Positions 30,927 to 50,454 of a DNA stretch of 64,000 bases are shown here, piece by piece (position 1 is the first letter of the stretch; each line of letters starts with the position of its first letter). The DNA lies in assembly GCF_006345805.1 (NCBI RefSeq), contig NC_043007.1, positions 63,488,001 through 63,552,000 on the forward strand, written 5' to 3'. A program made the position numbers and the translations under genes. Below the pieces are notes generated by a model. It saw only the letters and a list, made by a program, of their open reading frames with translations, made no database searches and had not been told where the DNA came from. The DNA comes from Octopus sinensis (Eukaryota).

Positions 30927-33900
30927 GTAAGTATCATCTTTCTAGATTGTTTTCCATATACTTCAGAAGAACCACTTATTTAAAATTCATTCATCTGCTC
31001 CGTTTTATTTATTCTTTTCTTCCATATCTCGATGGCTGTAAGATTGCTTTGTCGTGACAATTTTAAAAAATCATCTTTATTAGAATTCTTTATATGCTTG
31101 TACTTAAATTTAAGACAAAATGTGTGCTGCTACATAGGAGTAGAGAAAGAACGAGAAAAGCCAGAGGAGTTATCATTGAGCTGAGATCAGACATTTTCAT
31201 CAGCCACTTTTGCCAGTTACATGTAAATACACATCTTGTTAACACATTGAACTAAATATCTTTCTAAATGATAATTAAGTTATCGTTAACATATTTAAAT
31301 CTAATAAGCTAAAAAATAAATTGAATTAAGAAATACTTAAGCATGGAAGCAAAGGTGTTAGCTCAAGTAGGGGAGACAAATCTAGACAGGTTTCGCTCTA
31401 TTACACCTCCTCCGCAAAGCCTAAACTTTGCCATATTTTCCACAATAGGGTTGAGAACCACTAAACAGACGTGAAAAGATTTTTTTTTAACTCAGAGATG
31501 TCAGAAAGCAATAGTTTGAAGTTGGTGTTAATGTGTTGACACTAACTTACTGCAGTAAGCATCAAAAGTCTAATGAGAAATATTTTACCCGTGGTGAGAA
31601 GGAAAAGACAACATTAGCTCCATTACTGATACTATTTTAATCATTTCAGTAAGCACAAGACAACTGTTAGATATTTTTTTCTGCCCATGTTTATACAAAC
31701 CAAAATATCAAGTAATTAACATCAGTTATATTCACATATAGTTCTAAAACTTCTTTCATTCTCTATTTCTAGACATGTTAAAATAAAAAGATTTTTCCAT
31801 TCATTTTAACTATGTAGTAATAATAAATCAGTAATCAAATCTCTATATATTTAGCTATCATATGTACCATCTGTTTAACTGGCAGTAGAATATATATAGA
31901 GAGTACAGTAAATAGGAAACAAATAAAACTACTGTATATATTTTAGTAACACACTCTCAACATATGTTCACTGTTCATGATGATCTCTCAACCATATCTT
32001 GACACCTTCAGTGATGTGTCCTTTAAATTCAAATGAACATAGGAAAGAACTTTTTTTTTAACCTTCATTTTTATTTTCCTATTCTTAATAATCCATATTC
32101 ATTCTTCCATACACATATGTTGGATGGTTTTGCAAAAGTTGATGGTATGAAGCATTACACAACAAAGAGTAGTAGTGATAAAGTAGGAGGACATATCTAA
32201 GAATTTTGAGTACAACTTGAGATGACTGAAGAGTGAGACACATTAAAAGATGCATCTTTTAATGCATTCTCACACTTGTCTTCAGTTCTTTAGACAGCTT
32301 TTTAATGAATTAATTCTGTCTGTGATAAAGGTCAATGAAATATAACACAAGTCTTTGACAATGGGTTGATAGAATTGTTAGAACAAAGGGAAAAATGCTT
32401 TGTTGTGTATGTCCCAGCTCTTTGCTCTTAGTACCCAGGTAGATGTGTCAAATTTGTATCCGGCTGACAAAATAGTGTTTTGTTTACAAAAAAATTGAAA
32501 GAGAACTTGAAACTACATTTCTATTTTTACATGAAAACTCCATGACATCAGATAGTGCTTGTTGTGGAAGTCACTTGATGTTGTTCACAATGTGATGTCA
32601 GAGAAAGGAAGGTTGCTCTAACACACCACCCAGTTTAACACAATTACTGGTTTAGAGTGTTTAGCACTTAACATTGTCATGGATTTTGACTCCCATTTTA
32701 CTCCACATCTGTTTTTGATGGAGCCATTCTGGTTTGATATGTGATGTGGATACTATTAGGATAGGTTTAGCAATTCATTTTTTGATGTAGAGCAGCAAGT
32801 CATTACCTGGATATTACAATAGAACTCATAACTTTGAGGTTAAAATTATCAAAAAATTTATTTAAAGAAATTGTTTTGTTGCTATTAGATTTTCCTTATG
32901 TTAATCATAAAGTAAGTGCTGATGCCATGTAAAAATACTGGTGATTGTGCCACGTAAAAATACCCTGTACACTCTGTAAAGTAGTTGACATTAGGAAGGG
33001 CATCTAGCTGTAGAAATCAAGCCAAAACAAACTATGAAACCTGGTGCAGCCCCTGTCCTTGCTAGTTCCTATCAAGCCATCCTAACCATGCCGGCAAGGA
33101 AAACGCCTGTTAAATGTTGATGATGGTGATATTGGGGTTGATGTAATCAGTTAGTTTTTACTCTAAATTTGTTGCTTTCTGTTTATGTGACCAAAACATA
33201 ATTATCATTATTTTCATGTACCTCTGAAGTTTGCTAGAGGGAATGTATAACTCCAGTTTTCAGTCTGCTCAGCATGTGTGTTTTCTCATGGACATAATCT
33301 AATCTCTGCAAGCCAATAAATGAAAACACTTGTCTGTTTATAATAATATTGTTATTTAGCTCTAGATCAGTTTTGATTCAACAGGCCTATGATCAAAGTC
33401 ATTCCAACGATGACCATCCATTGTCTTTGTATTCCTAAACTAGATGTTTCCAATATAATTATTTGTAACAGATTGAATAACCTTTTTGGCTCATTACAAT
33501 ATTGTTGTTTATAGCAGTGAATTATGCCATCCTGTTGTATCCACTTGCTTTATTTTTTTATCTAAATTTCCTTCTGCCACTCCCAAATTCTTAACTTTTA
33601 TAGAAACATCTGCAATATAAGCTAATGAGAGTGTCACTGTTTGGTTATTTGACATAGTAGGCAAATCATCGTCCTCAAATCACCACACTCTGTTATCTTA
33701 AATAAGGAAAGGAGACATTAAATAATCTTGCCCTACACACCACTAAAAAGTGTGGGTGGCCATGACTAGAATGCTATTGACCATAGGCCTGCTTAATCAA
33801 AATTGATTTGAGTTTAAATAACACCTGCAACAGCTAAGTTTTTGAATAGGAGCAACCAGTTGAATTATGGATGTAAATGCATGCCTTTTTTGAGATGCAA

Positions 33901-35589
33901 GGTATTGTGCATATAGGAAATGATTTTCAATGGAAACTTCAAAGAAAAAATAAATTACTGTTGAAAGGGAGAAAAAAACCCTTTAAAGAGTTATTTGTTG
34001 TTGTGGGTGCTCATATTGATGGCAGAGGAGGATGAGCATCAATGAAGATGGCTATGGTGAATGGTGTTTGTAAATAGTGAAGTGTTGATAGTGGATATGG
34101 TTGTTGTTTTTTGGTGATGTTAACACAAAATAGCAATTAGGTGATAACTGTGAAAATATGATTGTTTGATGTAGTGGGAACTTATTAGAGTGATAACATC
34201 TGTGAAGGCTAGAAACAATAGATATTAAACAAGTAATTTCTCTCTTATATGTGGTGTTAATATAATGGATATGTGGCTAGCATGCACTAAATGACAGACT
34301 GTAGTTTGTAAAGATAATGTAGATTAAAAAAGAAATTGATTTAAATTAAAGCGAGTTAATAAGTTTAGGGAAAATATATAATTTTCAGTTTTTAAGTAAA
34401 ATCTTTTTATCAAATAATTTATCCTGGAGTTTTCTTAAATGTTTTAATCGGGATTATTTGATACATCTTTAAGATGAATAATTTTACTATACTGCATTCA
34501 CCCCATTAATTTCTGTACTCTAACTTTAAAAGCAAATATTGCATATGTGTGTATTAGGAACAGCTTCTCATTTAGATATGTGCTATTCAAAACAAACTTG
34601 TTTTAGTTTTTATTGCTGCTTTTTTTTTTTATAATTGTACTTGTTTGACCACTTACTACTTGTATGCATGTATAGGAATTTTTAGTGGTTAAAAAATGTA
34701 TACTGATATCAATTTATTGTTCCTACATTTATGATTAAGAATGGAGCAGTCATTTCACCTGGGTCCTTACCTAAAAGTCATATTGCACAAAGCAATTAAT
34801 AGGATTAAATGGATCATTAATGTCTGAAATAGACATTTTAATAATTTGGTACAGGAATAACACGCAAACAAATTTTAACAACAGACGCAACATCTATTAA
34901 AAACAAAAAAGAATCACACAAAGTAAATAAATAGCAGCTAAGCAATTGAATAGCTGAATACATCATTGAAAAGCTTGTTATGTTGAACAGGATACAATAT
35001 GCATTACACTTAATCATAAAGTAATATCAAAAGCTGGAACATTAGAAATCTCCCATCAATAACAAACAGCAAACCTGTTAATAAACTATAAATGGCTAGT
35101 CTTCCAGAACAAAAGATAAGTTAGTCAATACAGCAATAAAGGCTGTAGGTTCAATCTCTGAAAAACAACTCAAGAGAATACCAACTGATACATTCTGTCA
35201 GCAATACATCCAAGATGAGAAAAATAGTTTGAGAAACAAACATTTATAAATCTAATTGTGATAGTAAAACACTATATGAAAAAGCATCTTATTTAAAATA
35301 TCACTACTACCAGTACAAAAAAAGAAAACAAAACATAACAAAAAGGAATAGAAGTTAGTTATAGAATCAATATCTTAATAGCAGTATGTAACTCAAAACT
35401 TAACACTTATATAATACACAATTATAACTTAATGCTACTGGTCAAAAATTTAAAAGCCTGAAGGTGGCTAGTCAGACACATAAAGAGTATTTCCATGGGT
35501 CTCCTAAACATGACAAAAAAAATGTAATACCAACTGCCAGTACAGAAGTTCTCATCCAGAAGGTAACACAGAAGTGTTAAAATGGATCT

Positions 35590-36110
35590 TTGAACATTAT
35601 TGTTGTTGTTGTTGTTGTTATTGAGTGAGAGAGCAGTGCATGCCATCAAAGTGACACTGGGGTAAAATATACGAAGCCCAGTATACCCATCATGACAACC
35701 CGTTTGATAAGGGTACACCAGGCACATTCATCACAACCAAACGTGCACGATATGGTGATCTCATATCAAGATAAACAACGCATGACCTTGCAGGTGGGCC
35801 CCAGTTAGAATTTTCTTCTGGTCGAGTAGCCCATCCCGCTCAAAAGGTCCCTGAATAAGGATTGTTTAAGGATGTTGAACGAACCACCCATGTTTCCAAA
35901 GGTGAATTATCCAAACCTCCAAGAATTCCTTTCAACACACGGCTATGATGCTCCCCCACTACTCCTGCTTGTAGTCAGAGATGCACATATCGTCAGCCAC
36001 TAAGAGACATGGTCAACTGGTTATGGTCAAACAAATGACAAGTAAATCTGTGGTATTGAGCAGAATATTTGCTGTAGCCCATCTTTTATACCAAGACAAA
36101 ACAATGTACA
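35590..36110 (-). mobile_element. Retroposon 3' fragment with (AAC)n tail
   Basis: Higher-GC block ending in a (TTG)n/(TTA)n tract on the plus strand; family not identified. Confidence 0.45.
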
Positions 36111-36111
36111 T

Positions 36112-39100
36112 GCAACTGTAAAAGAACAGAGAAGTATTACAACAGAGAAAAGCAACACAATGGAGAACATACAATCACTCAATAGTCGAATAGAGAACAA
36201 AATTGTAACTGCCTACTCCTCAAACAGAAATAATGTGGAAAATACTATGATAACTGATATCAACACAGAAAATAACAACTCCAACAACATGGAACAGAGA
36301 AGCTTAACAGAATGAATAGCGACAACAAAAATATTGATGAGAACACAGCCAATACCAATGTCAACACCAGCAACAGAGAGGCAGGTGTATTTGGAAGTAA
36401 CAATAGTAGTAACCATGTGAACAATTCCACCACCACCATCAACAGGGAGAGCAGAACAAGTAGATTTGCAGCAGCATCTGCAAAATGACAACAAAAGCGA
36501 TGTTAGCCCTGGCCCGCAAACTCATAAAAAGAGAAAAAAACCTAGGCAAACCTTGCAATCCCAGCCAAAGTGGAGGTAGAAATTGAGAAGAGGACAGTAA
36601 AGTATAGGTGTATCTCGGCAGAGATGGCAGAGATCAGAGAGGATGTCGAATGCATTCAAAGAGACTGAAGTTTTGGTACCATCTTGGTCCTTTTTAAAAC
36701 AGAAGATCTGGCCATGAAGCATTCGGTGGGAGCCTGTAAAAGTGACCAGCTTATAATGTACCAATCGTACATGGGCAAAAGAACAATGAAAGTTTGAGTT
36801 CACAGAATAACACCAGATATCAACATATGGCGGCTTGTGGGATGCACGATCGCAGAGGGCAGCAGCACTCTCCTCTTAGAAGTCCTGGATAAAAACCACA
36901 AGACTTGGAGAACATCCCAGACCATGTCTGCCTCAAGAATGGGATGAAATTACCCTTGATCACTGAGGGCAGAAGGCCTCATTGCTTTGCTTGTGGTGAA
37001 GCAATACACCTACAAGCGCACTGTCCTCAGCGAAAAGGTACAAGTGCCTGTAGACATCCGTTGACACCAATACCAGGGCTTGGAAAACAAAAAACAGCAC
37101 CAGCTGTAGAGAGATCACCACCAACAACAGGGAAAGCAGCAAAAATAGCAACAATGGTGGCAGCAGTGGGAGGCGTAACAACAACACCAGCAGGAAAACT
37201 GTTGGAGAGGTCAACCACGAAAACTAACTCCTTGCAACCAAGCTCAACAACCCCACCTCTCACAAACAAGGATGCAGGAAAAGATACACATACAAACACA
37301 AATTCACTTCCACACAGAGAGGAGGAGGTTGTAGCAGACATTGGTTCAACCACATTAAAAAGTGATGATGAGGGGAAACAGAGTAAATCCAAAAAACTGA
37401 AAAGAAGTCACAGAGGCGAGACATCTTGTCCTACACCAAAACAAGATAACAAAGAAACTACACATACACCCACAACAAATGCAGACACTTAGACAACTCC
37501 TGCAGCACCACAGTCATCAACTAAAGCACCACAAACACCAAAATCCCGAAAGGAAACTCACACCACAAATGCAACAAGAACAGCAAAAAACAGTGATGCA
37601 GATTTGTGCGGAATTTCAGCAGCACTTTGCTGAACTGTACAGGGCACATGGTGGTGAACTTCACTTCCTACCTTTCAGCCAGGGATGTGGAGTTCTGCAA
37701 AATGCTGATAACAGCTGAAGATATATGTGACACGTTGGCTAGTTGCACGAGGGGGCAATCTCCAGGATTAGATGGTCTGCCCTTCAAGCTTTATATTCAT
37801 ATGTCAGACTTGTTTGGTGAGCTCTTGCAGTGTTTTCTGCAACTGGCAGCAGAACGGGAAAATCCCCAGATCTGTGAGCCATGATGTGGTGGTACTACTG
37901 AGAAAGGATCTGAACAAGGGGCACATTGTTGATAACTGTAGGCCTGTAACTCTGCTAAATGCAGATTACAAAATTTTGGCCAAGGTGTTAGCAAAGAGGT
38001 TGGCGCTTGTCATTGACAGACTGGTGGGTGATGAACAGACTTGCACTATCTTCAACCGATCTATCGACGACAATCTCTACCTCACGCGATACATCATAGA
38101 GAGGTGTTGGTAAAGAACCTGGCATAGGTGGGGCCCTAATCAATTTGGATCAATCGAAAGGTTTTGATAGGATTGACCATCAGTATTTGGAGGCTGTCCT
38201 TAAGGTGGCTGGTTTCGGTCCTGTTTTCAGAGGTTGGATCACTGCAATGTACAGTGACATCTGTTCGTTGGTCAAAGTAAATAGCCACCTGTTGGAATCG
38301 TTTAGCATCGCATGTTCAGTCCGTCAAGGATGCCCACTCTCATCTTTTCTCTATGTACTGATATTCAAGCCATTTCTATGGAAGCTGGATGTTTTGAGGG
38401 GCATCACAAGTGAACTAAGATGCGAAAGATTTGTGTCGGCATATGCAGACGAAGTCACTGTGATAGTGTTGGATGTCTCGGAAATTGAGATGGTTGGCAC
38501 TACCCTAAGGGAATACAAAGTGGTGACAGAAGCAATGATTAAACAGAAGTCAGTCGGTCTGCAGCTTGGCCCCTGGAGAGGCAGATCCTTGCCAACCAAC
38601 AGCTTTGTTGGGTGCTGGATGGAAGGACTGGTTAAGTTCCTCAGGGTCTGGTTCAGTCTGGACCTCCAAGTGGACAAGAACTGGGGTAAGGTGACAAACA
38701 GGATGGCCAATCTCACCCAGAAATGGGCCGAGAGGAAGCTGTCCTTGAAAGGTCAGGTGGAGGTGGTGAATGCATACATCCCATCCATCATGTACTACTG
38801 CCTGACTTCATGGCTGAACAGGCTGGTGCGCTTCCTGTGGAAGGGACAGGTACCACTTGTCAGACAGTCCATTTGCTATCAGCACTCATTGCGTGGAGGA
38901 CTGGGCATGCATGGTTGACATGCACTGAGGCTGCAACATCTCTGGTAATACCTTAACAGTGAGCAAGTATGGCTACTGTTCGTTGAAAGTGCTTTTCCTT
39001 AGCTCATCTCCTTGACATGTCTACAGTCCTGGATCAGGCATAGACCAAGGCAGGGCACTTGGCACCTAGAGTGTCTCCAAGTGCTCACGGCCCTTGTCCA

Positions 39101-39940
39101 GTCAGGCAGTGTGGTCGGTGGAAGTTCTATCTTGGAGTTCTGTGGAGGACAAGAGTGATGATGTTCTCAGAGAGGTTCTGAACATTGGGCGGGATCAACT
39201 GGCTGGCCTCTTCCGGAGGACTTTCAGGCTGGGGCCTATGGATAACTTTCAGAAATCCCTGGCTTGGAAGTGCTACCAGAGGGCTCTGTCAGTTCGCAAT
39301 AAGCTTTACAGGCATAGGTATGCAGTCAGACGGGCTTGTCTGAGATGCATGCAGAGTAATGAAACTGTTCTGCATGCTCTCATACAGTGTCCACACATTG
39401 CTGCCTTGTGGAGCTTTGTTGAACAGTTATTGTCACATGTAGGATGGATCCAGCTATCGTCCAAGTCCATTGTGAAGATCATCCTGCCTCCTTCCTTTGG
39501 CTGGGAAGGACAAGCAGTTTTTCTCTGTTTGGTGGCTATGGCAAAAGCCTCATTGACTTTTTCAGGTTCCACCTGAAAAGGAAAGTGAGGCTGGAGAGAG
39601 AGGTGCTGTCACCCAGTCAGTTTGTTGAAAGGTGGATGAATGTGGCAAGAATGGCCCATGTGAATGGGCCTACTCTAAGTGTGCGCCTGTAGACCAGATG
39701 GAATGAAGAAGAGAGGTGTGCCTACCTTAGGGGCCTTTGGTGTTAGGGTATCGAAAGTGTGTGAGCTCACCTCTCAGTGGAACTCCCCCCTATTGGGGAA
39801 GTACATTGTTGGTTTAATCTCCTTGTTAATTTTTTTTTTTTTTGTTTACACGTTTAACGCCACTGTCCCTCATCTGTGTATCATCTTTTATGTTTTGTGT
39901 TTGGCCCTGGTGGCCAATAAAGAAAGTATTATTATTATTC
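36112..39940 (+). mobile_element. Tx1-like (L1 clade) LINE, degenerate, endonuclease domain apparently missing
   Basis: ORF1 zinc knuckle CFACGEAIHLQAHC. RT motifs PGLDGLP, RPVTLLNADYKILAKVLAKRL, DQSKGFDRIDH, SVRQGCPLS, AYADEVTV. C-terminal CLRC...ETVLHALIQCP; AATAAA and (ATT)n tail at ~39917-39940. Confidence 0.92.
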
Positions 39941-41120
39941 AAAATGAAACCTAACACTAATAAGATATTGTGATAAAACAAACTGAAATTGGATGGTAGT
40001 GGTGTTTTCAGACAAGACATATCCCTTCCTAGACATGTCTTAATATCATGAAATTGTCATGTTCATTGCTTTCTTATACAAAGTTTTGAGGGATAAGCAA
40101 AATGAAAAATAAAATCAGGAGAGTTAGGAGTTCAAAAGTGGATTATGACTTCGCATGATAGCAGTAACCATTCTACTTTCTAAAACTGACTGTGATGCCA
40201 TTTTGTTTTGGCATTTATACATTTCCCAAGGATACTAACATTGTAAATGAAATGAGACATTTTTTTATTATATTGCAGACTCGCTTAACCAAATGTAACT
40301 ACTGCACTTCAGCAACTGTACCTTATCTGAAAAATTTTAAAGCTGCACCATTTTAACTGTGTGTCAAGCTAAATTTTCAACATGAAGAATGAATATTACC
40401 AGACCATGCTTCCAAGTTCAAAAAGTAAAAATTAATAAATTAGTTCTGTACAGAGGAAGGTGTGACTGTATGGGTAAGAAATTCTCTTCCCAACCTGGTT
40501 TAGGGATTCAGTCCCACTCTGTAGCACTCTGGGTGTCTTCTACTATAGCTCCTGGTTGGCCAAAGCCTTATGAGTGTATTTGGTAGACAGAAACTGAAAG
40601 AAAACTGTCATATATACACATCTATAAAATGTGTGCATGTTTGTTTACATTTTGCTCACTTCTATGAAAGTTGTTACATATGTGCAATGTTGTCAGTTCT
40701 CTTGTCAACACATCATTTGCTTGCTTTACTCTTTTGAAGCCATGTGGAATAAAAGGACCCTTGCTTGAAAAACAGGTAAGGGTCAGCAACAGGAAGGACA
40801 TTTGACTATAAAGCAGTGCCTCAAAAACAAATTCATCTAACCCATGCATGCATAGACAAATGGATGTAAAAACGAATGATAAAAATAAACGAACAATTTA
40901 GATTAAACAATATTAATCAATGTCCTCTCTCTGTTTTTAGTACTAATGCTACTATAATTCTCTCTATGCAGCTCTATCTAAATACTGCCTGTGTCCCTAG
41001 CTTTCCTTCTTCAGTCATCCTTACTGTAGCCATAGTGGATGTAATAGTTACTATATGGAGTATTTTCTTGTAGAGGGATTGATAGGTGCAGTTAACCCAA
41101 GCAGGATTTGAACTCGAAGG

Positions 41121-41548
41121 AACTTAGCTATTATTCTTCTGCCGATGGTATCTTAATAATTCATTCCCTAAAATAGCTGTTTTATGGTATTTAGAGTTAA
41201 GTTCAAATTCAGTCCAAGTCAAAAGACTCATATGCATAAAATATGAACAAATCATTATTTACTGGAGTTGACATTGTACCTACATAGAAGAGTGGTAAGT
41301 AGATATGGGAAAGCATTGAACCTTGCAGTAACTACCTTTACTGCAAGGTTCAATGCTTTCCCATATCTACTTACCACTCTTCTATGTAGGTACAATGTCA
41401 ACTCCAGTAAATAATGATTTGTTCATATTTTATGAATATGAGTCTTTTTACTTGGACTGAATTTGAACTTAACACTAAATACCATAAAACAGCTATTTTA
41501 GGGAATGAATTATTAAGATACCATCGGCAGAAGAATAATAGCTAAGTT
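41121..41548. repeat. 428-bp palindrome (211-bp arms, 6-nt loop, 3 mismatches)
   Basis: 41121-41331 is the reverse complement of 41338-41548; loop CTACCT. Confidence 0.97.
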
Positions 41549-43446
41549 AGTGTGAGTTTTATTTCAGGCTTTCTAAACCTCATCAGTAAAATGTAAATTT
41601 CTCTATACTTGTTAAAGTAGTGATAAGACAATTACTAAATAGATGTACAATATTATACTTGTGTTCATTTGTTTTTACATCCCTTTTCCATGCTAGCATG
41701 TGTTAGGCATATTCAGCATCCAACAGTTGTATGCTATTTCTGTGTTAACCTTTGCTTGTTTTTCAAGTAAAGGATCTCTTATTTCACACATCTTTGAAGG
41801 TGTGAATTGAGTGGGAAATTTGTTGTCAGTAGAAGTAACAGCAGCAACACTGCTTGTAGCAAGCGTCTTTCATAAAGCACAAATATAAACATACACACAC
41901 ACACACACATAATGGGCTTCTTTCAGTTTCTGTCTACCAAATTTACTCAAGACTTTGGTTTGTCTGGGTACAAAACATTTATCCAAGGTGCTGCACTGTG
42001 GGACTGAACCCGAAACCATATGGTTGCGAAGCTAATTTCTAAACCATACAACTATACCAACACTTTGAGAGAAAATTAGCACTTTTATTCAGGAACACCA
42101 TCAGTATTAAAAAGTAGTTAAGTTAATGATCACTGCTTTGACAAGTTTATGCTTTGCTGAGCAGGTATAAGACCAAAACATGTCTAGAGTTATCTCCTGT
42201 ACATACTGGAATAATATACTATAATATATAATTATTATTATTATTGGTGATAATAATGATGATAACTGTCAAGAATTGCCATGCGGGTGGTAAGCTCCTG
42301 GCAAACTATATTATGCAAGTCAGCTTTGACTCTTGTCTTAGGTATTTCACCTATTCTACTAATACTTATCAGAAAAGGCACAAACATCACAACTACAATC
42401 CTTTCACTCTGTACAACAATAGTGCTGATCTTTTATCGCAAACACATAAAGATCTAGCAGTTAACTTAATGTGGAATAAATATTTTATCTATTATAGTTG
42501 TAGTGGCATAAGATCTTGTAGTTTATTTAAATCATTAAACAGTATAAAAATAGGAAGGTAATCAAAGTAGCCTAACAATGCCAAGTTAGAGAAAAATGAT
42601 CTGTTCAATATTTCATTATCATCATCATCATTTTAATGCCCACTTTTCCATGTTTGGATGGATCAGATAGAATTTGTTGAAGTAAATTTCCTACCACTGG
42701 ATGCCCTCCTTGTCACCAACTTTCACTTGTTCCCAAATAAGATATTTTCTCTATGGTTAGACATGTTATGCGAAAGATTGGAAACAAACAAGTTTGTATG
42801 ATAGTGTTGCTTGTTGACAACTATTGTGCAATGTCTAGACAAGGAGACACTAGCACTCCTACACACACACACTGTCTGCTGGATCTATTCACAAAATTTT
42901 GGTAAGCTCTGCGTTATACTAGAAGACACTTACCGAAGGTGCCATGTGAATCACATGGTTAAGAAACAAACTTCTTTACTGCAAATTTAATATTCCAGCT
43001 TCTTTTTACTTTAAAAAAAAAACCCTAATCACTAACTAGAAATTTTGCATTGAGAGCTAAAGTGTTTACAATACTACACATGTCAAAGATGCACAAAGAT
43101 GAGTAGATAGCAATATTAATACAATAAACTATTAATAAATAGTCAAGATGATGGTGACTGTTAATCAGCGGTTAATCTGTGTTGATAGAATGCCTTTTAG
43201 ACAAGTCTGTCATGTTTCTGAGCTCTAATGAATATAAGAAATGTGTAAATGTTGCAGCCTATGTAAAATATGTTGCATTTTTTGCTATCTTTTATAGTTA
43301 AGGTAGCATAGGATTTTGTTTATTTCAATAGAGCATGCTATAAACTCTAAAGTGCTTGGTTGTTTGCCACTGTGTGCCCAAGGTGCCATACAGTGGGGCT
43401 GAACGAGCTTCTTATCCACACTGCCATGACTGTTTTTTTTTACATC

Positions 43447-43477
<31 letters not shown>

Positions 43478-43521
43478 CATACATACTAGAAATTATTGTT
43501 ATGTTGTACTCTTTTAAATAG

Positions 43522-43643
43522 GATGTTGGCAAGCATTTGAAAATGCTTTCTCCAATCAATTCTGTGAAATTTATGGAAGATTTTGATCCAGAAAAAAGTA
43601 GCAGAGAAATGCGTAAAATGAACCGAAGAATTTATCGAGAGAA
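43522..43643 (+). CDS. ARL14EP: Coding exon 2 of the ARL14EP-like gene
   Basis: DVGKHLKMLSPINSVKFMEDFDPEKSSREMRKMNRRIYRE. FDPEKSSREMRK resembles the FxPExxxRexRxL motif that precedes the Cys-rich domain in ARL14EP. Canonical AG/GT; phases match both neighbouring exons. Too short for the ORF track. Confidence 0.85.
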
Positions 43644-45307
43644 GTACGTTTTCTGTATTTTTCATTCTTGAATGTATTTTATTTCTCAATATTGTGGCCA
43701 TTAATCAAATTTGCTTTTGTGACTTTATTTCTGAAGAATAGATTGACTATAATTTTATATATTGGTATTATGTTGTGTTGAAGTTGACCAATGAAAATCT
43801 CAATTTATCATTCTTGTTTTAAGATTTAATTTTAATATGTGCACTTGGAGGCACATAGTCTTATGTGGGTTGATATTAAAAGGGCTAAACAGTTTTTGTT
43901 CAGTTTGAGTTTTAGGAAATATCTTTGTTGTGTCACTAACTTGGTGGGAATTTAAGAAGGAACCTTTTAGTTTTTTTAACATCACACAAACTTCTGTTAG
44001 CATTTCTTTGTCTTTATTTTATTTTTATGGTCTGGCAGCATATTTTAAAATAGAGAAAACAAAACATTCTTTGATACAAATAACATCTTTCTTTTCCTTT
44101 CTATCCATATTCATTACCAGAAAATGCTGCTGTATGGTGGGACTTATCTTAGCTTTTATAACATTGAATAGTTGAGAGACATACCTCTCGTTTTAGGACT
44201 CTTGAGGGCTAAGACTCTTACCAAGTAGGATGTTAATGAAGATTATCTGGTACCCAGGGAGATGAAAACTGAAAAGTGTATTGTCTAAATACATATAAAA
44301 TCTCAATATTAAATATTAAGTGTATAAATATCTGAAATAAATTATTGTTAGTAGGTTTCAATTTTTTTATGTGGTAAGAAGTTTGCTTTTGCACCACATA
44401 GTTCTGGGTTCAGTCCCACTGCATGACACCTTGGGCAAGTGCCTTCAACTCTAACCCTGGGCAACCAAAGTCTTGTAAGTGAATTTGATAGACAGAAATA
44501 AAAGAAGCTTGTCATGTGTGTCCCCCATGCCACCATTTGACAACCAGTGTTGATTTGTTTCAGTCCTTATAGCTTAGTAGTTCTGCAAATGAGATTAGAA
44601 TAAAAGTTCCAGGTTTTAAAAACAAAGTATTGGAGTTGACTCATTCAAAGTAGAGCCTCCACATGACCACAGTAGAATGATTGAAACAAGTAAAAGATAG
44701 AAGATATTAACCTTGTATTTAGAGATGAAATTTTTAAAATTTTTTACTGATGTGCTGTTTCATTCAGAGTGACTGCTTGTCATCCTGGGAGTGCAAATTA
44801 GTACCAGACTGAATTTGAAACAAGCCATTTGAAATATGATGAAGATGTGAATATTAAAATTGCTTTCATATCTAAAGATAAGGTTAATATTGTGTGTATA
44901 ATATAATGTATATACAAAAGTGAATCAGCACTAGCTGTATTATTTTGTTTCAGTGAAACTGCTTAGAGATTTATTTGTTAAAAATATAAGGCTTTCTTCA
45001 GAATGCTAGTGGATCACCAGATTCACTGTTTCAACCTGATTTGATCTCCTCAGTAACAAATACTACAGATGTTCTGAGCCAAACCAAAAATGCTTGTTCT
45101 AATATAGAAATTTATAAGCAAAACATTTACTGATTTGTGCAAAAGCTGGCCAGGCAGAAACTAAATTAATATATGCACTTGAAACAGTTACAGGTTCAAG
45201 TGTCTGTGTGTATAACATTTATGTTTATACAAATGTGGAACAGAACCAGCTATAATATTTTACTTTAGAGAATTATTTTAAAATTTAATCTATGAAATAA
45301 GTTTATA

Positions 45308-48291
45308 TCTCTATATCTATATACAGCAAAATGTCTGTGTGTCCTTTATACAAATCCACAGTTTTTCATATAAAAAGCTCGCATTTTCTATGGGCTTTCA
45401 AAACTGTCTGAAGTTGGTCGTGAAGATCTTTTCATTTCCCCAGTCACCCCAGAAAGCCATTAAAAAAATTGATTAACCGACCCCTTATGCCCATAAGTTA
45501 TGGGCATATCCATATAAAATTGCTAAAACATAGATATTTGTACACAGTGCATGTGTACAGCTAGATACGCCAATAGACTTCCAGCTGTTTTTTGATTGGA
45601 CAGAGATAATTTTACCCTTGACAGTTGAATGCGCATGTGCATTTGCAGACAATCTGTATGACTCAGCACATTTATGTGTTTTGCGAAGACGTGTTATCAT
45701 ATGTTTTGGCTTTCAAACGTGCAAGCTTTTTTGATTTGAGAAATGCAGGGAATAATTAACGAGTTAGACCAAGTGAATGACAAGAGAGTGGGATTTTCAC
45801 GAAAGACCAAATATGCTTGATATGCTATCATTCCTTAAGTATGCCATAAAAGAGTTGGAGCCTATTCAATGAATCTATTTAGGAAGGGCTTTACTTTTAT
45901 GCTTTCGGTTGATTTAAGTTATCCAGCAAGAGCCCAGGATGTTTTATTCAAGTAGGATTAAAAATGAAAAATGGGTAAGTTGACCCCCACCAAGGGATAT
46001 TCATAAAAAACATTTATTTTTATTTGCATTCAGCCTAAGATCGAGTCATTTGCTACCTACACAGCAGGGACATAGGATTATCAAGGTGATCCTTTTGGTG
46101 CAAAAAATCTTAATTTGATTCAAGTTTACCAAAATTGCCAATCAATCAATGGAAACTCAATAAAACTATTCCTTGAGGATTTCCGCATTGAAATTGACTG
46201 CAACCTTTTCTTTTAGCCCTAACTTGAGGTACGAATGACCTAAGATACAAAGAGTTTCTTAAGCGAAATTTCATGCTTTTGTGTTTTGAGATACGAGTGA
46301 AAATTGAGATGCTAATTAATTTCCAGTCACATTTTTCCGCTTGCTAGGAAATTGGATAACTTTGTCAGACCTGTTTATTCATTTCATTTTATTGGTGAAG
46401 GTTTGCTTTCATGGTGGTCTTTATCAATTTTCTAACATGCTCCCCCATCACCTTCAACAAAGCCACTAAATTTGCGATGATTAATTACCCAGTGCAGCTG
46501 CACCTCTGGATGGGCTCAGTCAAACGCGTTAAAAAACATATGTGATGGAAAGGCAAGCATAATTTCCGAAAACAAAGAAAGGGATTTAGCTCAAAATGAA
46601 GTAATCTTTATCTGTAAAAAGCCTAACCAAACAGAAGCACACCAGTACCTAAGACAATTCAAGGCTAGAACTCACGAGTCATACAGTGTTTCTGCACTAC
46701 CTTGATTAAGTAAAAACTTTTTATTGAAACACCAGAAACGAACAAGCACATGATATGAAGCTTTCAGTTAGCGGGACTGTGCACATGTCATAATCGGTCA
46801 AAAAAAAAGGAAGAAGAAAGCAAAAAACTCGAATTTGACTGCACCACAGCATGATTTTGAAAATACACATAACCATCGTTTGTTGAGTTCGCATTCAGCC
46901 TGAGGTCAAATCATTCGCTATCTACATAGCATGTGACAAGGGTACTCAGGTTATTACTTATGGTGTGTGAAATCTTAATTTGATTAGAGTTGGCTCATAA
47001 CAATCCCTTACAGGCTTCCTCATTCAAATTGAATTACAATGTTTTCTTTTAGCCTTAACTTCCACATAATAAGCTCTTTGTTTGCTACTGCAAATTGATT
47101 GGGTTTTTACACTTCACAAATGCCCTATGTTTTTCTAACTTGAATCCACTTTCCACTAATTAATTAACCCGTGTATCAAACACCACAAAGAGCGTTTTCC
47201 CACATAGACACTTAGTCATCATGTGCGTGAGCATGGCACTTCGTATGACCTTGAACATGCGCGTGTACTGGCCAATGCTGCTGAGGGACATATGTAAACG
47301 TTTGACCTTAGATGCGCAGCCTTGGATTTGTGTGTACTAGATCATTATCCAATAAGATTCAATGCGCTAATTAAGCATGAGGTTGCATGCTTTGGCGCCC
47401 AGACTCAAACACTTTTCACAATTATGCTTCATGACTCAGTTTCCGTTACTGACCACAAGCTTTGTTCATAAAATTCCACTTTACCTATCACTTTTACTTG
47501 GGTCTGCCAGGCCATATTTTTGCCTAGCAACTAATCAATTAACACTTAAAGCATCTGCTGCAGTTTGACCCCAATTTTTTTGCGTAAAAATAACCTTTTT
47601 TTGCTTGATATCAGTTCACATTTTGATTATTGCTTCTTTTGATTAACCAAAGTGTTAATTAGGGAATTTGCCATAATTCGGCATCATTTTTTTGAATAAA
47701 AATAGACGTTTTCGTGTTTGATCTCACTTTTTGATTACTGCTTCTTTTGAGCAGCCAATGTTTTCACCAACCTACGAGCACAGTAAACAGTTTTTGTTCT
47801 TGAAACCTGTCTACGATTTCTTTACTGTTTTTAAATAGCCCTTTGTTTTCCATTTGGGTACCGCTTCTGCCATTATCGTTTTGATTATTGCTTTGCCATT
47901 ACTTAAAATCGTGTGCTTATCGGTTGCCCCAAGCTATCTCACTTAGTCCACAAAAACTAAATCCATTTAAAGTTCACTAATTTCAATAAATTGCCAAAAT
48001 GCCCCCAAAGAAGAGAGCTTGCATTGGAAGAAAGACGGCTGATTCAGAAGCTAAGAGGGCCAGAAGGGCCAATGAGGCGCCCCTAGACAGAGCTACTCGA
48101 TTAGCTTGGAATGCCACTGCCACAGACAAAACAAGGGCAGTCGAAACCGCAGAACAAACATAGGCCTGCCATTCTCGAGATGCCGCTGCCACGGCCAGCG
48201 CAAGGGCAGCCGAAACCGCAGAACAAACACAAGCCCGTCGTTCTTGAGATGCACTAGCACTAGACCCGGCAACGCCGGGTCATAGTGATAG
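45308..48291 (+). mobile_element. Helitron C: ~3-kb non-autonomous Helitron
   Basis: Inserted between A and T. 5' TCTCTATATCTATATA; 3' GC hairpin GACCCGGC-AAC-GCCGGGTC (48263-48281) followed by ATAGTGATAG (CTAG variant). RepHel N-terminus MPPKKRACIGRKT...ETAEQT starts near 47999. Confidence 0.82.
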
Positions 48292-48547
48292 TATTCTATA
48301 TAATAGGTACGTTGTTCTTTTAAACATTTGAGATATAAATAGATAATTGATAAATAGTTTATCTGATATTTTTACCTTCTGAAATCAAATATACACTAAA
48401 TTTCGGTTAAAGAAACCCAAGATTAGGTTACAAACAATATGATACAGAGTAATAGGATATTACGTATAACCTTTCAGTTATACACCTTGTCTACTGTGTA
48501 CTCTTGAAACAATAATTTTTGCCTATACACACACACATGCACACATA

Positions 48548-50019
48548 CAGGGTGCAGTGAATATATTGTCTAAATTACACTAAAATGAAAATAACACTGA
48601 CATCTCATTTTAACATATATTTACCAAAATTACATAAAAAATAAAATCACTATTGACTTCAACCACAGCCTCCAGACGATTTCGGAATCTTATGCAACTG
48701 TTTTGGACAGTCTCCTTGTTTAAGTTGGTGAATACTGCCATAATCCTTGCCTTCAGTTCATCTTTGGTGTTACAAGGAGTTTTCTTGGTTTCTCACTCAA
48801 CTGTGCCCCACACATAATAATCAAGGGAGTTGCAGTCTGGGGAGTTAGGTGGCCAGATGTTAAAGGTGGTGTGGTTTCAGAAATTATCTGACAGCCATGA
48901 CTGGGTTCTTCTGTTTGTATGGCATAGTGCAGAGTCCTGTTGCTAGACATAGGGTCTTCCAGCAGCCACCCTCTTGACCCAGGGCAGCAGCACCTCCTCC
49001 AGGCACTTTATGTAGGCTTCCATATTGAGTCTGAGGCTGTGTGGGAAGATGAATGAAGGCATCACTCACCAAATCCTTTGTGAGCCGCTCTCCGGCTATC
49101 TATCTGCGGCTTTATATAGCTATGGTAAGACCTCACCTGGAATTTGCATCACCGGTCTGGAACCCCTATCTTGCCCAGGATATCAATCATCTGGAAGCTA
49201 TTCAGCGACGTGCAACCAAAAGAATACCCTCCATCAGGCATTTGCCATATCCTGAACGCCTTACTTCCCTGGGCATGGACACATTGAAACTCCGACGTCT
49301 GGCAGCTGACTTGGCAGACACCCATAAAATTATCAACCATCGTACAAACAATAACTCTGAGCACCTTTTCAAACTCCACCCATCTAACACCCGTGGACAT
49401 ATTTACAAAGTAAGAAAACAGCACAGCTCCCATGACTTCAGGAAACATTTTTTCACACTGAGAGTTGCTGAAGCATGGAACAAACTGCCAGCATCAGTTG
49501 TTAGTTGTCGGAGCACTGCATCCTTCAAAACTTCCATGCTTCCTGAGATTCACCAACACTACACTTGATTTTCTCCCCTCCATACACACACAAGCATGTA
49601 TCTGACTCATACATTGTTCGCTTTCCTGACATTTCTACATTACTGCATGTACTTTATATGCACTTTCTGACAAGTTGTGGTGCACCTGAGCACTGTATAC
49701 AATAATTTCATTATTATTACTATTATTTTATTATAATGTCGCCATCACTAGCGATCACTTCAACCCCCATGATGTTGATTGTATGTTTGATTTTTATCAC
49801 TCTTGGTACATCTGTTCGTACTGGAGCTTCCAGCGTGAATGCCAAGCAGTACAGCATGTCGTTTCCAAATTTCTGGCAGAGTGAATTGCATCATGGTGTT
49901 GTTTTTCTCACAGACTGTGCCCAACTGGCCCTACCATACTGTGTAGTTGACAAAATCAAAAACAAGCAGTGCACGGAATTAAAAATATAAAATGGCGACA
50001 ATTTACCCATTGCACCCTG
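48548..50019 (-). mobile_element. Mariner-like (probably maT/DD37D-type) deletion derivative
   Basis: TA-flanked imperfect TIRs CAGGGTGCA.TG..TA.ATTGTC. Minus-strand QQDSALCH...WPPNSPDCNSLDYYVWG. Interrupted by a CR1-like insertion. Confidence 0.88.
49063..49734 (+). mobile_element. 5'-truncated CR1/L2-type LINE nested in the mariner element
   Basis: RPHLEFASPVWNPY...LEAIQRRATKRI...RRLAADL...TRGHIYK...FFTLRVAEAWNKLP (ORF 49053-49568), 3' UTR and (ATT)n tail; removing it restores the mariner reading DGDIM|PSFIF. Tail fragment of the same family at ~8440-8495 (-). Confidence 0.92.
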
Positions 50020-50231
50020 TATTTATGCATATACTAAATGCACACACGTACATTTATATACATATATATATAAAGAGAGTGCAATACAACAAATATGTTT
50101 GAATATATTGTAATTTTATTTATTTCAAGTTTCAATTACCAAAGTATATTTCTGTAAAAATATATTTCTTGAAAGCTATTCAAATATGATTTGAAATAAT
50201 ATTTTCTTTATTTCTTTTTTTTTAATATCAG

Positions 50232-50454
50232 CATGAAAACCAACCAAATGTATGACGAAACTGGTCGACTTCTTGACAACAGCAAAGATGTTTGTGATTG
50301 TTTGGATGAGGACTGTCCAGGATGCCATTTTCCATGTAACAAATGTGGTTCTGAAAAGTGTGGCACTGAGTGTCGATGTAATCGGAAGTGGGTATATGAA
50401 GTTGTGGAAATTGAAGGCTCAAACCTAGTGATTAGAAATGTTTCTGTAGCATAA
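50232..50454 (+). CDS. ARL14EP: Terminal coding exon: ARL14EP (ARF7EP_C) cysteine-rich domain
   Basis: YDETGRLLDNSKDVCDCLDEDCPGCHFPCNKCGSEKCGTECRCNRKWVYEVVEIEG matches the ARL14EP C-terminus (YDxxGxL...CDCLDEDCxGCxxxCxxCGSxKCGxECRCxRKWxYExxEIEG), all nine Cys present. Strong polypyrimidine acceptor; AATAAA at 50791. Confidence 0.95.

What the first reader, a model, noticed from the sequence alone, without database searches (positions are those of the whole stretch)
43522..50454. Intact SETDB1-partner module suggests a KRAB-ZFP-like targeted silencing system
Seen: all nine Cys, the RKW.YE motif and the FDPE motif are retained. Established: ARL14EP/C11orf46 associates with the SETDB1-ATF7IP H3K9 methyltransferase complex through its Cys-rich domain, and C. 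elegans ARLE-14 acts with MET-2/LIN-65. Inference: adding a transposase-type HTH could tether SETDB1 to pogo/Tigger terminal repeats or satellite motifs. That would be a DNA-sequence-guided H3K9me route analogous to KRAB-ZFP/TRIM28 in a lineage lacking that system, or to fission yeast CENP-B homologues that silence Tf2 retrotransposons.
Basis: inference. Interest (0 to 1): 0.8.

Follow-up and report, generated by a model that had tools for sequence, protein, structure and literature searches.

The report
Octopus SETDB1-partner gene with transposase-type HTH
A real, conserved three-exon octopus gene joins a CENP-B/transposase-type DNA-binding fold to the cysteine-rich module through which ARL14EP binds the H3K9 methyltransferase SETDB1, so DNA-guided silencing is plausible, but a KRAB-ZFP-like anti-transposon role is not shown.

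Summary
Window 43522-50454 contains the last two exons of an ARL14EP-like gene. All nine Cys, FDPE and RKWVYE are present, as are the equivalents of the human disease residues G218 and R236. The third exon alone matches Pfam ARF7EP_C at E=1.6e-26. The modelled Cys-rich domain superposes on the crystal structure of the C11orf46 Cys-rich domain bound to the SETDB2 MBD (8HFP, rmsd 1.7 Å).

The HTH lies outside the given coordinates, in exon 1 (30510-30926). Joining the three exons gives a 253-aa protein identical to the RefSeq 'ARL14 effector protein-like' of Octopus vulgaris/sinensis. The HTH is a divergent CENP-B/Tc5-type domain 2. Pfam scores it just below cut-off here, but an orthologue passes. 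A reciprocal profile search finds molluscan CENPB-type HTH proteins. CENP-B is the top structural match, though at a non-significant E-value (0.61).

The fusion occurs in two octopus paralogues, in Argonauta, and in uninterrupted ~2-kb contigs (taken as mRNA) of another organism, probably a cephalopod. The HTH is under strong purifying selection (dN/dS about 0.05). Bivalve homologues carry a THAP domain instead.

Tethering SETDB1 to DNA is therefore a reasonable mechanism. The slow evolution, the two HTH-bearing copies and the lack of a cognate transposon argue against a KRAB-ZFP-like arms-race system. Targets and SETDB1 binding remain untested.

The parts
30510..30926 (+). Exon 1 (CDS start ATG 30510; donor ACT|gtaagt, phase 0). 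Residues 1-139: a disordered Ser/Asn/Asp-rich tail (1-65), then a basic arm plus the HTH (66-139).
   Evidence: The spliced product is 100% identical to P0001, RefSeq 'ARL14 effector protein-like'. In the AF2 model residues 1-70 have pLDDT <55.
30744..30914 (+). CENP-B/Tc5-type helix-turn-helix (domain-2 type), residues 79-135. The three helices are 70-93, 102-120 and 125-136. The recognition helix reads NWYTRFLRRN.
   Evidence: Pfam HTH_Tnp_Tc5 E=0.001-0.002, 18.6-19.5 bits against a cut-off of 22.2; orthologue P0003 scores 25.7 bits. Reciprocal profile hits are CENPB-type HTH proteins. HTH-only AF2 model has pLDDT 86; its top PDB match is CENP-B-DNA 1HLV, rmsd 1.0 Å over 56 columns but E=0.61.
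30927..43521 (+). Intron 1 (12,595 nt). It holds a decayed LINE ORF2 on the same strand at about 36.9-39.6 kb.
   Evidence: RVT_1, zf-RVT.
43522..43643 (+). Exon 2 (122 nt), residues 140-180 (the last codon is split). This is the N-terminal half of ARF7EP_C, with FDPE (43582-43593) and the basic helix REMRKMNRRIYRE.
   Evidence: The exon is 122 nt in all four genomic copies examined.
43644..50231 (+). Intron 2 (6,588 nt). It holds an STPR-like 69-bp repeat (48111-48252) and a reverse-transcriptase-tail-like ORF with no Pfam hit (49053-49568).
50232..50454 (+). Exon 3 (223 nt; stop TAA 50452-50454), residues 180-253. This is the Cys-rich domain of ARF7EP_C.
   Evidence: Pfam E=1.6e-26. PDB 8hfp_A matches by sequence at E=8.4e-23 and by Foldseek at E=1.9e-7, TM 0.81, rmsd 1.7 Å.
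50293..50379 (+). Nine-Cys core (C201...C229), equivalent to the human Cys-rich domain 209-237. It includes G210 (human G218) and R228 (human R236).
   Evidence: Human domain limits and mutations are from PMC6739341.
50383..50400 (+). RKWVYE motif (residues 231-236).
   Evidence: R231 is invariant and W233 is present in at least 90% of sequences.

Best explanation
This is a functional cephalopod ARL14EP-family gene (paralogue A, Octopus sinensis chromosome CM016869.1). Its first exon supplies a single CENP-B/Tc5-type HTH and its last two exons supply the complete ARF7EP_C module.

Proposed mechanism, in three steps. (1) Inferred from homology: the Cys-rich domain docks on the non-canonical MBD of SETDB1, as human C11orf46 does. 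(2) Inferred from fold, a basic recognition helix and strong constraint: the HTH, together with the basic arm before it, contacts DNA. (3) Inferred: the protein thereby anchors or stabilises the SETDB1-ATF7IP complex at particular, evolutionarily stable genomic sequences and promotes H3K9 methylation and repression.

In design it is a host gene fused to a transposase-type DNA-binding domain, encoded in a separate exon. It is a slowly evolving adaptor or transcription-factor-like protein, not an arms-race family. The architecture, its conservation and its selective constraint are shown here. Expression as one mRNA is indicated for paralogue B by uninterrupted contigs. The three mechanistic steps are inference.
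For: Gene model: three exons with canonical, phase-compatible splice sites. The product is identical to a RefSeq protein found in both O. sinensis and O. vulgaris.

Conservation of the fusion: the same three-exon structure (exon 2 = 122 nt, exon 3 = 223 nt) occurs in the O. vulgaris orthologue, in Argonauta hians and in paralogue B on another chromosome. The paralogue-B orthologue P0003 is one uninterrupted 894-nt ORF on 1.8-2.0-kb contigs listed in 118 Logan blocks. I read these as one mRNA encoding both the HTH and the Cys-rich domain.

Constraint: Octopus versus Argonauta dN/dS is 0.048 for the HTH, 0.045 for ARF7EP_C and 0.28 for the N-terminal tail. O. sinensis versus O. vulgaris shows one synonymous and no nonsynonymous change in 762 nt. 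Flanking and intronic DNA differs by about 1.2%, which predicts about 9 changes (Poisson P about 1e-3, my arithmetic).

Cys-rich domain: ARF7EP_C E=5e-34. Sequence and modelled fold match 8HFP, the C11orf46 Cys-rich domain in complex with the SETDB2 MBD. The equivalents of G218 and R236 are invariant, and R236H abolishes SETDB1 binding in human cells.

HTH: Pfam Tc5 hits at the same profile positions in all five cephalopod proteins. Reciprocal hits go to CENPB-type HTH proteins. The fold matches CENP-B domain 2.

[quoted passage not shown] DNA-tethered C11orf46 represses a promoter. Bivalve homologues carry THAP in place of the HTH.
Against: There is no direct evidence for DNA binding, SETDB1 binding or repression in any cephalopod.

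The HTH of this protein scores below Pfam's cut-off (18.6-19.5 against 22.2 bits). A cephalopod-only profile does not reach CENP-B directly. The Foldseek E-value for 1HLV is 0.61.

Only domain 2 of the bipartite CENP-B/pogo DNA-binding domain is present. A single HTH normally gives low sequence specificity.

No assembled transcript was recovered that encodes exactly paralogue A. The Logan contigs taken as transcripts belong to paralogue B.

Most ARL14EP homologues (about 60 of 68) have no recognisable DNA-binding domain, so a DNA-binding domain is not needed for the family's basic role.
Confidence: 0.55

Rival explanations
1. The HTH recognises pogo/Tigger terminal inverted repeats, MITEs or satellite motifs. 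The protein is then a KRAB-ZFP/TRIM28-like system, or a fission-yeast CENP-B-homologue-like system, dedicated to transposon silencing through SETDB1.
For: The HTH belongs to the family used by pogo/Tc5 transposases and by CENP-B/Abp1. The SETDB1-binding module is intact. From established knowledge, S. pombe CENP-B homologues silence Tf2 elements and KRAB-transposase fusions act as repressors; the latter is in bioRxiv 10.1101/2020.05.07.082677.
Against: Of 1.84 billion representative proteins only 14 match the HTH profile at E<=0.001. Among those scanned, the relatives are multi-HTH host-type proteins and none has a DDE transposase domain. A word-based search found no further relatives. There is no Tc5-type HTH or pogo remnant elsewhere in the window or in three related loci. 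The fusion is old and the HTH evolves slowly (dN/dS 0.05). Only two HTH-bearing paralogues exist, which is the opposite of KRAB-ZFP dynamics. Any cognate transposon would probably be long extinct.
Confidence: 0.15
2. This is an ordinary ARL14EP cofactor. The HTH no longer binds DNA in a sequence-specific way. It serves instead as a protein-interaction, nucleosome/histone or non-specific nucleic-acid contact. It would play the role of the histone-H3-binding N-terminal part of human C11orf46 and simply help SETDB1 stay on chromatin genome-wide, as ARLE-14 does.
For: Human C11orf46 binds histone H3 through regions outside the Cys-rich domain. In arle-14 mutants the distribution of H3K9me2 is normal although its level falls. 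Only one HTH of the usual pair is present. The Pfam score is sub-threshold.
Against: The recognition helix keeps its basic residues (TRFLRRN, compare CENP-B DRFRRRR). The domain carries a net charge of about +6 by my count and is preceded by a conserved basic arm, [KR][KR]xxRQLT[KR]V. It is as strongly constrained as the Cys-rich domain. An independent THAP fusion in bivalves points to DNA binding as the selected property.
Confidence: 0.22
3. The protein is a cytoplasmic ARL14/ARF7 effector that links vesicles to the actin-myosin system, as the family name implies, and has no chromatin role.
For: The family was named for this function. Mutlu et al. note that it was the only published vertebrate function before 2018.
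Against: An HTH with a basic arm, and the conserved residues implicated in SETDB binding (the G218 and R236 equivalents), both point to the nucleus. The nuclear role is documented in human, mouse and worm.
Confidence: 0.05
4. The gene model is an artefact. The HTH exon belongs to a separate gene or transposon relic and is not spliced to the ARL14EP exons.
For: The HTH exon lies 12.6 kb upstream across an intron full of transposon debris. No transcript contig encoding exactly this paralogue was recovered.
Against: Exon phases match exactly. The same architecture is found in four genomic loci and in intronless ~2-kb contigs listed in 118 Logan blocks for paralogue B. The HTH is under purifying selection. 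No HTH-only protein was found apart from an intron read-through ORF, P0005.
Confidence: 0.03

Closest known systems
Human/mouse C11orf46 (ARL14EP)
   Same: The C-terminal ARF7EP_C module is shared: FDPE-type motif, nine-Cys domain and RKW.YE. There is 56% identity over the crystallised Cys-rich domain (8HFP). The G218 and R236 equivalents are retained.
   Different: In the literature read here, the N-terminal part of the mammalian protein is described as binding histone H3, not DNA. The octopus protein instead has a disordered tail followed by a CENP-B/Tc5-type HTH.
C. elegans ARLE-14 (MET-2/LIN-65 partner)
   Same: It belongs to the same family and has the same proposed job, promoting chromatin association of the SETDB1 orthologue.
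   Different: No DNA-binding domain is reported for ARLE-14. Its loss lowers H3K9me2 levels without changing their distribution.
CENP-B DNA-binding domain (1HLV) and S. pombe Abp1 (1IUF)
   Same: The HTH matches domain 2 of the CENP-B DNA-binding region. A profile that includes relatives gives E=3.5e-11 to 1HLV residues 67-130. The fold matches at rmsd 1.0 Å over 56 columns. Abp1 matches at E=0.0097.
   Different: Domain 1 (CENP-B_N/psq-type HTH) is absent, as are the DDE-derived and dimerisation domains. The sequence link to CENP-B is only transitive.
Host-transposase fusion genes of tetrapods (KRAB-transposase fusions such as KRABINER; SETMAR)
   Same: A transposase-type DNA-binding domain, encoded in its own exon, is joined by splicing to a host regulatory domain that recruits a repressive chromatin machinery.
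   Different: The host domain here is the ARL14EP Cys-rich domain, a direct SETDB1 ligand, not KRAB, which acts through TRIM28. The DNA-binding domain is N-terminal. The lineage is a mollusc. No cognate transposon can be identified.
Bivalve THAP-ARF7EP_C isoforms (Crassostrea virginica P0008, Mizuhopecten yessoensis P0010, JGI P0029)
   Same: The ARF7EP_C module is the same, with an N-terminal DNA-binding domain of transposase ancestry (THAP E=1.7e-12 and 9.6e-8).
   Different: The DNA-binding fold is different (a zinc-coordinating THAP), so the acquisition was independent. These proteins are annotated as one isoform among several.

Membership tests
ARL14EP / ARF7EP_C (Pfam PF14949) | Profile score above Pfam's gathering threshold over the whole domain | tested here: met
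   117.4 bits against a cut-off of 27, E=5.3e-34, profile positions 2-102 of 103.
ARL14EP / ARF7EP_C (Pfam PF14949) | Nine-Cys domain with conserved spacing, plus the FDPE and RKW.YE motifs | tested here: met
   C201, 203, 208, 211, 215, 218, 223, 227 and 229 are present, as are FDPE 160-163 and RKWVYE 231-236. Eight Cys are invariant across 15 homologues.
ARL14EP / ARF7EP_C (Pfam PF14949) | Fold of the Cys-rich domain as in the solved C11orf46-SETDB2 MBD complex | tested here: met
   The AF2 model has pLDDT 84-92 in this region. Foldseek to 8hfp_A gives E=1.9e-7, TM 0.81, rmsd 1.7 Å over 66 columns. This is a prediction, not an experiment.
ARL14EP / ARF7EP_C (Pfam PF14949) | Residues known to be required for SETDB1 binding (human R236; disease residue G218) | tested here: met
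   R228 and G210 are invariant in the alignment. The human data are in PMC6739341.
ARL14EP / ARF7EP_C (Pfam PF14949) | Physical association with SETDB1/ATF7IP | not testable with these tools
   Needs co-IP or pull-down with octopus SETDB1.
CENP-B/Tc5-type HTH (Pfam PF03221 HTH_Tnp_Tc5; PROSITE HTH CENPB-type) | Profile score above Pfam's gathering threshold | tested here: inconclusive
   This protein scores 18.6-19.5 bits against a cut-off of 22.2. Orthologue P0003 scores 25.7 bits and passes. All five cephalopod proteins align to profile positions 3-60.
CENP-B/Tc5-type HTH (Pfam PF03221 HTH_Tnp_Tc5; PROSITE HTH CENPB-type) | Reciprocal search retrieves bona fide family members at the matching segment | tested here: met
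   Of the 12 hits outside the ARL14EP group, 10 were scanned against Pfam and 8 of those carry strong HTH_Tnp_Tc5 domains. Where the best stretches can be compared, they coincide with the matched segment. Four of the hits are named 'HTH CENPB-type domain-containing protein' by UniProt.
CENP-B/Tc5-type HTH (Pfam PF03221 HTH_Tnp_Tc5; PROSITE HTH CENPB-type) | Three-helix fold superposable on CENP-B domain 2 | tested here: met
   The HTH-only AF2 model has pLDDT 86. 1HLV_A is the top PDB match, with rmsd 1.0 Å, TMq 0.69 and 28% identity, but E=0.61.
CENP-B/Tc5-type HTH (Pfam PF03221 HTH_Tnp_Tc5; PROSITE HTH CENPB-type) | Bipartite DNA-binding domain with a preceding psq/CENP-B_N HTH | tested here: not met
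   Residues 1-70 are disordered and give no Pfam hit. Only the second HTH is present.
CENP-B/Tc5-type HTH (Pfam PF03221 HTH_Tnp_Tc5; PROSITE HTH CENPB-type) | Sequence-specific DNA binding | not testable with these tools
   Needs EMSA, SELEX or DAP-seq.
Host-transposase fusion gene (sensu Cosby et al.) | Transposase-type domain encoded by an exon separate from the host domains and joined by splicing | tested here: met
   The HTH lies wholly in exon 1 and ARF7EP_C in exons 2-3. The boundary falls at the same place in four loci.
Host-transposase fusion gene (sensu Cosby et al.) | An identifiable cognate transposon family as the source of the domain | tested here: not met
   No DDE domain was found in the ten close relatives scanned. 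No further relatives appeared in the word search. No remnant lies near the gene.
KRAB-ZFP/TRIM28-like transposon-targeting system (functional analogy) | A large, rapidly diversifying family of DNA-binding domains tracking transposon families | tested here: not met
   Two HTH-bearing paralogues were found per octopus genome. HTH dN/dS is 0.048. Only five related proteins exist in 5.8 billion clusters.
KRAB-ZFP/TRIM28-like transposon-targeting system (functional analogy) | DNA-binding-domain-dependent recruitment of SETDB1 and H3K9me3 to bound sites | not testable with these tools
   Needs CUT&Tag or ChIP and tethering assays.

The most novel reading that the evidence does not exclude
The ARL14EP Cys-rich module is a portable, direct SETDB1-recruiting repression domain. 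In lophotrochozoans it has been joined at least twice, independently, to transposase-derived DNA-binding domains: a CENP-B/Tc5 HTH in cephalopods and THAP in bivalves. This would create a DNA-sequence-guided route to H3K9 methylation that bypasses KRAB/TRIM28. The two octopus paralogues differ in the recognition helix (FLRRN versus FLGRN) and may read different sites.
Probability: 0.3. Interest if true: 0.75.

Novelty: new variant of a known kind. Interest (0 to 1): 0.5.

Why it matters
How SETDB1 is aimed at particular DNA outside vertebrates is largely open. Vertebrates use KRAB-ZFP/TRIM28, and flies and worms use small-RNA pathways and poorly defined cofactors. ARL14EP is a direct ligand of the SETDB1 MBD, and its own means of engaging chromatin is unclear.

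A natural fusion of that ligand to a DNA-binding fold offers a simple, testable model for DNA-guided SETDB1 recruitment in molluscs. The fusion is conserved across octopods and present in intronless contigs of another, probably cephalopod, species, and bivalves have a parallel THAP fusion. It also hints that ARL14EP in general acts as the chromatin-anchoring subunit of the complex.

In addition, it extends the 'transposase DNA-binding domain captured by a host repressor domain' principle, so far documented in tetrapods, to an invertebrate lineage and to a new effector domain.

If the HTH turns out not to bind DNA, the gene is just an ordinary, already annotated ARL14EP-like paralogue.

Tried and rejected
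1. A cephalopod-only HTH profile against PDB sequences found no CENP-B hit. The link to CENP-B is transitive only.
2. Foldseek with the full-length model recovered only the Cys-rich domain. The HTH had to be modelled alone.
3. I looked for more HTH-ARL14EP proteins, to date the fusion and to name the species behind P0003. A region-restricted search returned only the same five proteins. The SRA run numbers are not in the paper library. The species of P0003 stays unknown. It is inferred to be more distant from Octopus than Argonauta is, because dS is saturated.
4. I searched for long (417-1328 aa) proteins carrying ARF7EP_C, to test for widespread fusion to other DNA-binding domains. The only hit was a Pinctada MFS-transporter chimera, probably a gene-model fusion.
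5. An ML tree of the ARF7EP_C domain, built to place the duplication, was unresolved. It shows only that paralogue A (Octopus plus Argonauta, support 99/99) sits on a longer stem, while paralogue B has very short branches.
6. I searched the window and three related loci for other Tc5-type HTHs or pogo remnants and found none.
7. The Structure 2024 paper on the MBD-Cys-rich-domain complex is not held, so interface residues could not be checked one by one.
8. Literature searches for ARL14EP/C11orf46 together with THAP or transposase returned nothing on such fusions.
9. The gene-model-artefact reading was rejected on conserved exon structure, intronless contigs and constraint. A purely cytoplasmic ARL14-effector role was considered unlikely.

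Full report
**What is at the coordinates**

The window is eukaryotic, AT-rich and full of transposon debris. The interval 43522-50454 runs from the acceptor site of one coding exon to the stop codon of the next.

- Exon 2 (43522-43643) reads DVGKHLKMLSPINSVKFMEDFDPEKSSREMRKMNRRIYRE.
- Exon 3 (50232-50454) reads (N)MKTNQMYDETGRLLDNSKDVCDCLDEDCPGCHFPCNKCGSEKCGTECRCNRKWVYEVVEIEGSNLVIRNVSVA*.
- The junctions are canonical and share a phase-2 codon.
- The nine Cys, FDPE and RKWVYE are all present.
- Exon 3 alone matches Pfam ARF7EP_C at E=1.6e-26.

**The whole gene**

An ORF at 30510-30983 gives a sub-threshold Pfam HTH_Tnp_Tc5 hit. It has a gtaagt donor after 30926, in phase 0. Joining 30510-30926, 43522-43643 and 50232-50454 gives a 253-aa protein with no stop read through.

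This protein is 100% identical over its full length to P0001, 'ARL14 effector protein-like [Octopus vulgaris]'. The 19,945-nt gene is an exact substring of Octopus sinensis CM016869.1, so the window comes from that genome. O. vulgaris encodes the same protein.

**Is the fusion real and maintained?**

There are four genomic copies:
- O. sinensis paralogue A (this gene);
- O. vulgaris paralogue A;
- Argonauta hians paralogue A (P0002);
- a second O. sinensis paralogue, B, on another chromosome (P0004).

All four have the same three-exon plan. Exon 1 varies in length and ends just after the HTH. Exon 2 is 122 nt and exon 3 is 223 nt.

A paralogue-B orthologue from an unidentified organism, probably a cephalopod (P0003), is a single uninterrupted 894-nt ORF. 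It sits on 1.8-2.0-kb contigs listed in 118 Logan blocks. I read these as mRNA, which would put the HTH and the Cys-rich domain in one transcript.

Between Octopus and Argonauta, dN/dS differs by region:

| Region | dN/dS |
|---|---|
| HTH | 0.048 |
| ARF7EP_C | 0.045 |
| Disordered N-terminal tail | 0.28 |

dS is about 1.1, close to saturation, so these values are approximate.

Between O. sinensis and O. vulgaris the CDS has one synonymous difference and no nonsynonymous one. The surrounding non-coding DNA differs by about 1.2%. About nine differences would be expected in 762 nt.

One caveat applies. No assembled transcript encoding exactly paralogue A was recovered.

**The C-terminal module**

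The full protein scores 117 bits on ARF7EP_C. Eight Cys are invariant in a 15-sequence alignment that includes molluscs, a brachiopod, an insect and a bird. G210 and R228 are also invariant.

Taking the chain sequence of PDB 8HFP and the published limits of the human Cys-rich domain (209-237), these residues correspond to human G218 and R236. In human cells R236H abolishes the C11orf46-SETDB1 interaction, and deleting the Cys-rich domain weakens it (PMC6739341).

The AF2 model of this region has pLDDT 84-92. It superposes on 8HFP chain A, the C11orf46 Cys-rich domain crystallised with the MBD of SETDB2, with TM 0.81 and rmsd 1.7 Å. A 2026 review states that this domain contacts the non-canonical MBD of SETDB1/2 (PMC13108219).

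They include ARLE-14 acting with MET-2 and LIN-65 and promoting MET-2's association with chromatin (PMC6105299).

**The HTH**

The evidence is consistent but individually modest.

- Pfam HTH_Tnp_Tc5 aligns to the same profile positions (3-60) in all five cephalopod proteins. Only P0003 passes the curated cut-off (25.7 bits). This protein scores 18.6-19.5 bits against 22.2.
- A profile of the four cephalopod HTHs was searched against 1.84 billion representative proteins. It found only 14 hits at E<=0.001.
- Two of those 14 are the ARL14EP relatives themselves. Ten of the other twelve were scanned against Pfam, and eight carry strong HTH_Tnp_Tc5 domains.
- Most of these are molluscan proteins with arrays of Brinker/psq plus Tc5 HTH pairs. 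Named examples are Magallana gigas A0A8W8HXK3, Lottia LOTGIDRAFT_158851 and a Saccostrea protein. Several are labelled 'HTH CENPB-type' by UniProt. None of those scanned has a DDE transposase domain.
- Modelled alone with these relatives, the domain is a confident three-helix bundle (pLDDT 86).
- Its best PDB match is CENP-B(1-129) bound to the CENP-B box, at rmsd 1.0 Å over 56 columns and 28% identity. The Foldseek E-value is only 0.61.
- The extended profile hits CENP-B residues 67-130 (E=3.5e-11) and S. pombe Abp1 (E=0.0097). The cephalopod-only profile does not.

I conclude that it is a divergent CENP-B/Tc5 domain-2 HTH. It keeps the conserved Trp/Phe core and a basic recognition helix (NWYTRFLRRN), and a conserved basic arm precedes it. 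The partner HTH (domain 1) is absent. Residues 1-70 are disordered.

**Comparative context**

Among 68 homologues of 139-443 aa:
- 67 have ARF7EP_C;
- 5 have the Tc5 HTH, forming one closely related group (three named cephalopod proteins and two unnamed Logan sequences);
- 3 have a THAP domain: Crassostrea virginica isoform X3, Mizuhopecten isoform X1 and one JGI transcript-sized contig.

The same SETDB1-ligand module has therefore been joined to two unrelated DNA-binding folds of transposase ancestry in two molluscan classes. Most homologues have no recognisable DNA-binding domain.

A search for longer ARF7EP_C proteins found only a probable gene-model chimera. Recurrent capture is thus limited to these cases, within the sensitivity of that word-based search.

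Paralogue B keeps a near-ancestral ARF7EP_C sequence. Paralogue A, the window gene, sits on a longer branch. The two differ in the recognition helix, FLRRN against FLGRN (alignment).

**Mechanism**

The best-supported reading has three inferred steps.
1. The Cys-rich domain binds the SETDB1 MBD.
2. The HTH with its basic arm contacts DNA.
3. The protein anchors SETDB1-ATF7IP at stable genomic sequences.

One precedent is that C11orf46 tethered to a promoter by dCas9-SunTag represses it, with R236H tested as the comparison construct. The design also parallels tetrapod host-transposase fusions, where transposase DNA-binding domains in separate exons are spliced to KRAB and yield repressors (bioRxiv 10.1101/2020.05.07.082677).

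**What is not supported**

Targeting of pogo/Tigger TIRs or satellites has no support, and neither does a KRAB-ZFP-like arms race.
- No cognate transposon or close DDE-bearing relative was found.
- The HTH evolves as slowly as the Cys-rich domain.
- Only two HTH-bearing paralogues were found.

That KRAB-ZFP/TRIM28 is restricted to vertebrates is established knowledge and was not tested here.

**Novelty and verdict**

The gene is already annotated by RefSeq as ARL14 effector protein-like. The HTH is not reflected in its name. I found no paper describing HTH or THAP fusions of ARL14EP.

It is a new variant of a known kind: an ARL14EP family member with a transposase-type DNA-binding domain. Interest is moderate (0.5). 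The architecture is solid and suggests a clean experiment on SETDB1 targeting in invertebrates. Every functional step is still inference.

Noticed in passing
window 47999-48285 (+), inside intron 2: A short ORF (MPPKKRACIGRK...) matches the STPR DNA-binding repeat family (PF21107, E=1.1e-5, 26.2 bits against a cut-off of 27). It lies over a 69-bp x 2.1 tandem repeat at 48111-48252, which corresponds to 23-aa units. Probably a relic of a transposon or a decayed gene.
   Followed up: partly
window 36905-39576 (+), inside intron 1: A decayed LINE ORF2 on the same strand as the gene. RVT_1 E=5.6e-10, zf-RVT E=4.2e-8, and further RT fragments at 37772-38113. Octopus introns here are much larger than in Argonauta (gene 19.9 kb against 4.6 kb).
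   Followed up: partly
window 49053-49568 (+), inside intron 2: A 171-aa ORF that looks like the C-terminal tail of a LINE reverse transcriptase (...VRPHLEFASPVWNP...). It has no Pfam hit.
   Followed up: no
window 20784-22399 (-): Fragments of a PIF1-like helicase (PF05970 E=1.7e-25; Pif1 2B domain E=1.9e-12). Likely a Helitron-type element remnant upstream of the gene.
   Followed up: partly
window 5419-6167 (-) and 53710-54105 (-): An integrase core (rve, E=2.2e-6, below cut-off) and an RVT_1 fragment (E=2.5e-17). More retroelement debris.
   Followed up: no
window 52307-52798 and 61457-61855 (+); also L009 about 19000-19210: A dispersed repeat that translates to 'MDGSTGV.EARRLHQAQ...FLRLDALPNANHS...'. 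It recurs within the window and in the paralogue's locus on another chromosome. No Pfam hit.
   Followed up: no
P0058 (Octopus bimaculoides LOC106870970; not in the window): A third, divergent cephalopod paralogue. It has the Cys-rich domain only, with no HTH and no FDPE segment, and a KKKKRKRKK patch before the Cys-rich domain. It sits on a very long branch in the tree.
   Followed up: partly
L009 10001-22636 (O. sinensis CM016880.1), paralogue B: Paralogue B (P0004, 317 aa) keeps the near-ancestral ARF7EP_C sequence (SFANPGKFMEDFDPERSA). The window's paralogue A has SPINSVKFMEDFDPEKSS. The two differ in the HTH recognition helix (FLGRN in B, FLRRN in A), which may mean a different DNA preference.
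   Followed up: partly
P0008, P0010, P0029 (bivalve and JGI homologues): THAP-ARF7EP_C architecture in oyster and scallop isoforms. Pecten's annotated protein, which has an identical C-terminal domain, lacks the THAP. This suggests that isoforms with and without the DNA-binding domain coexist.
   Followed up: partly
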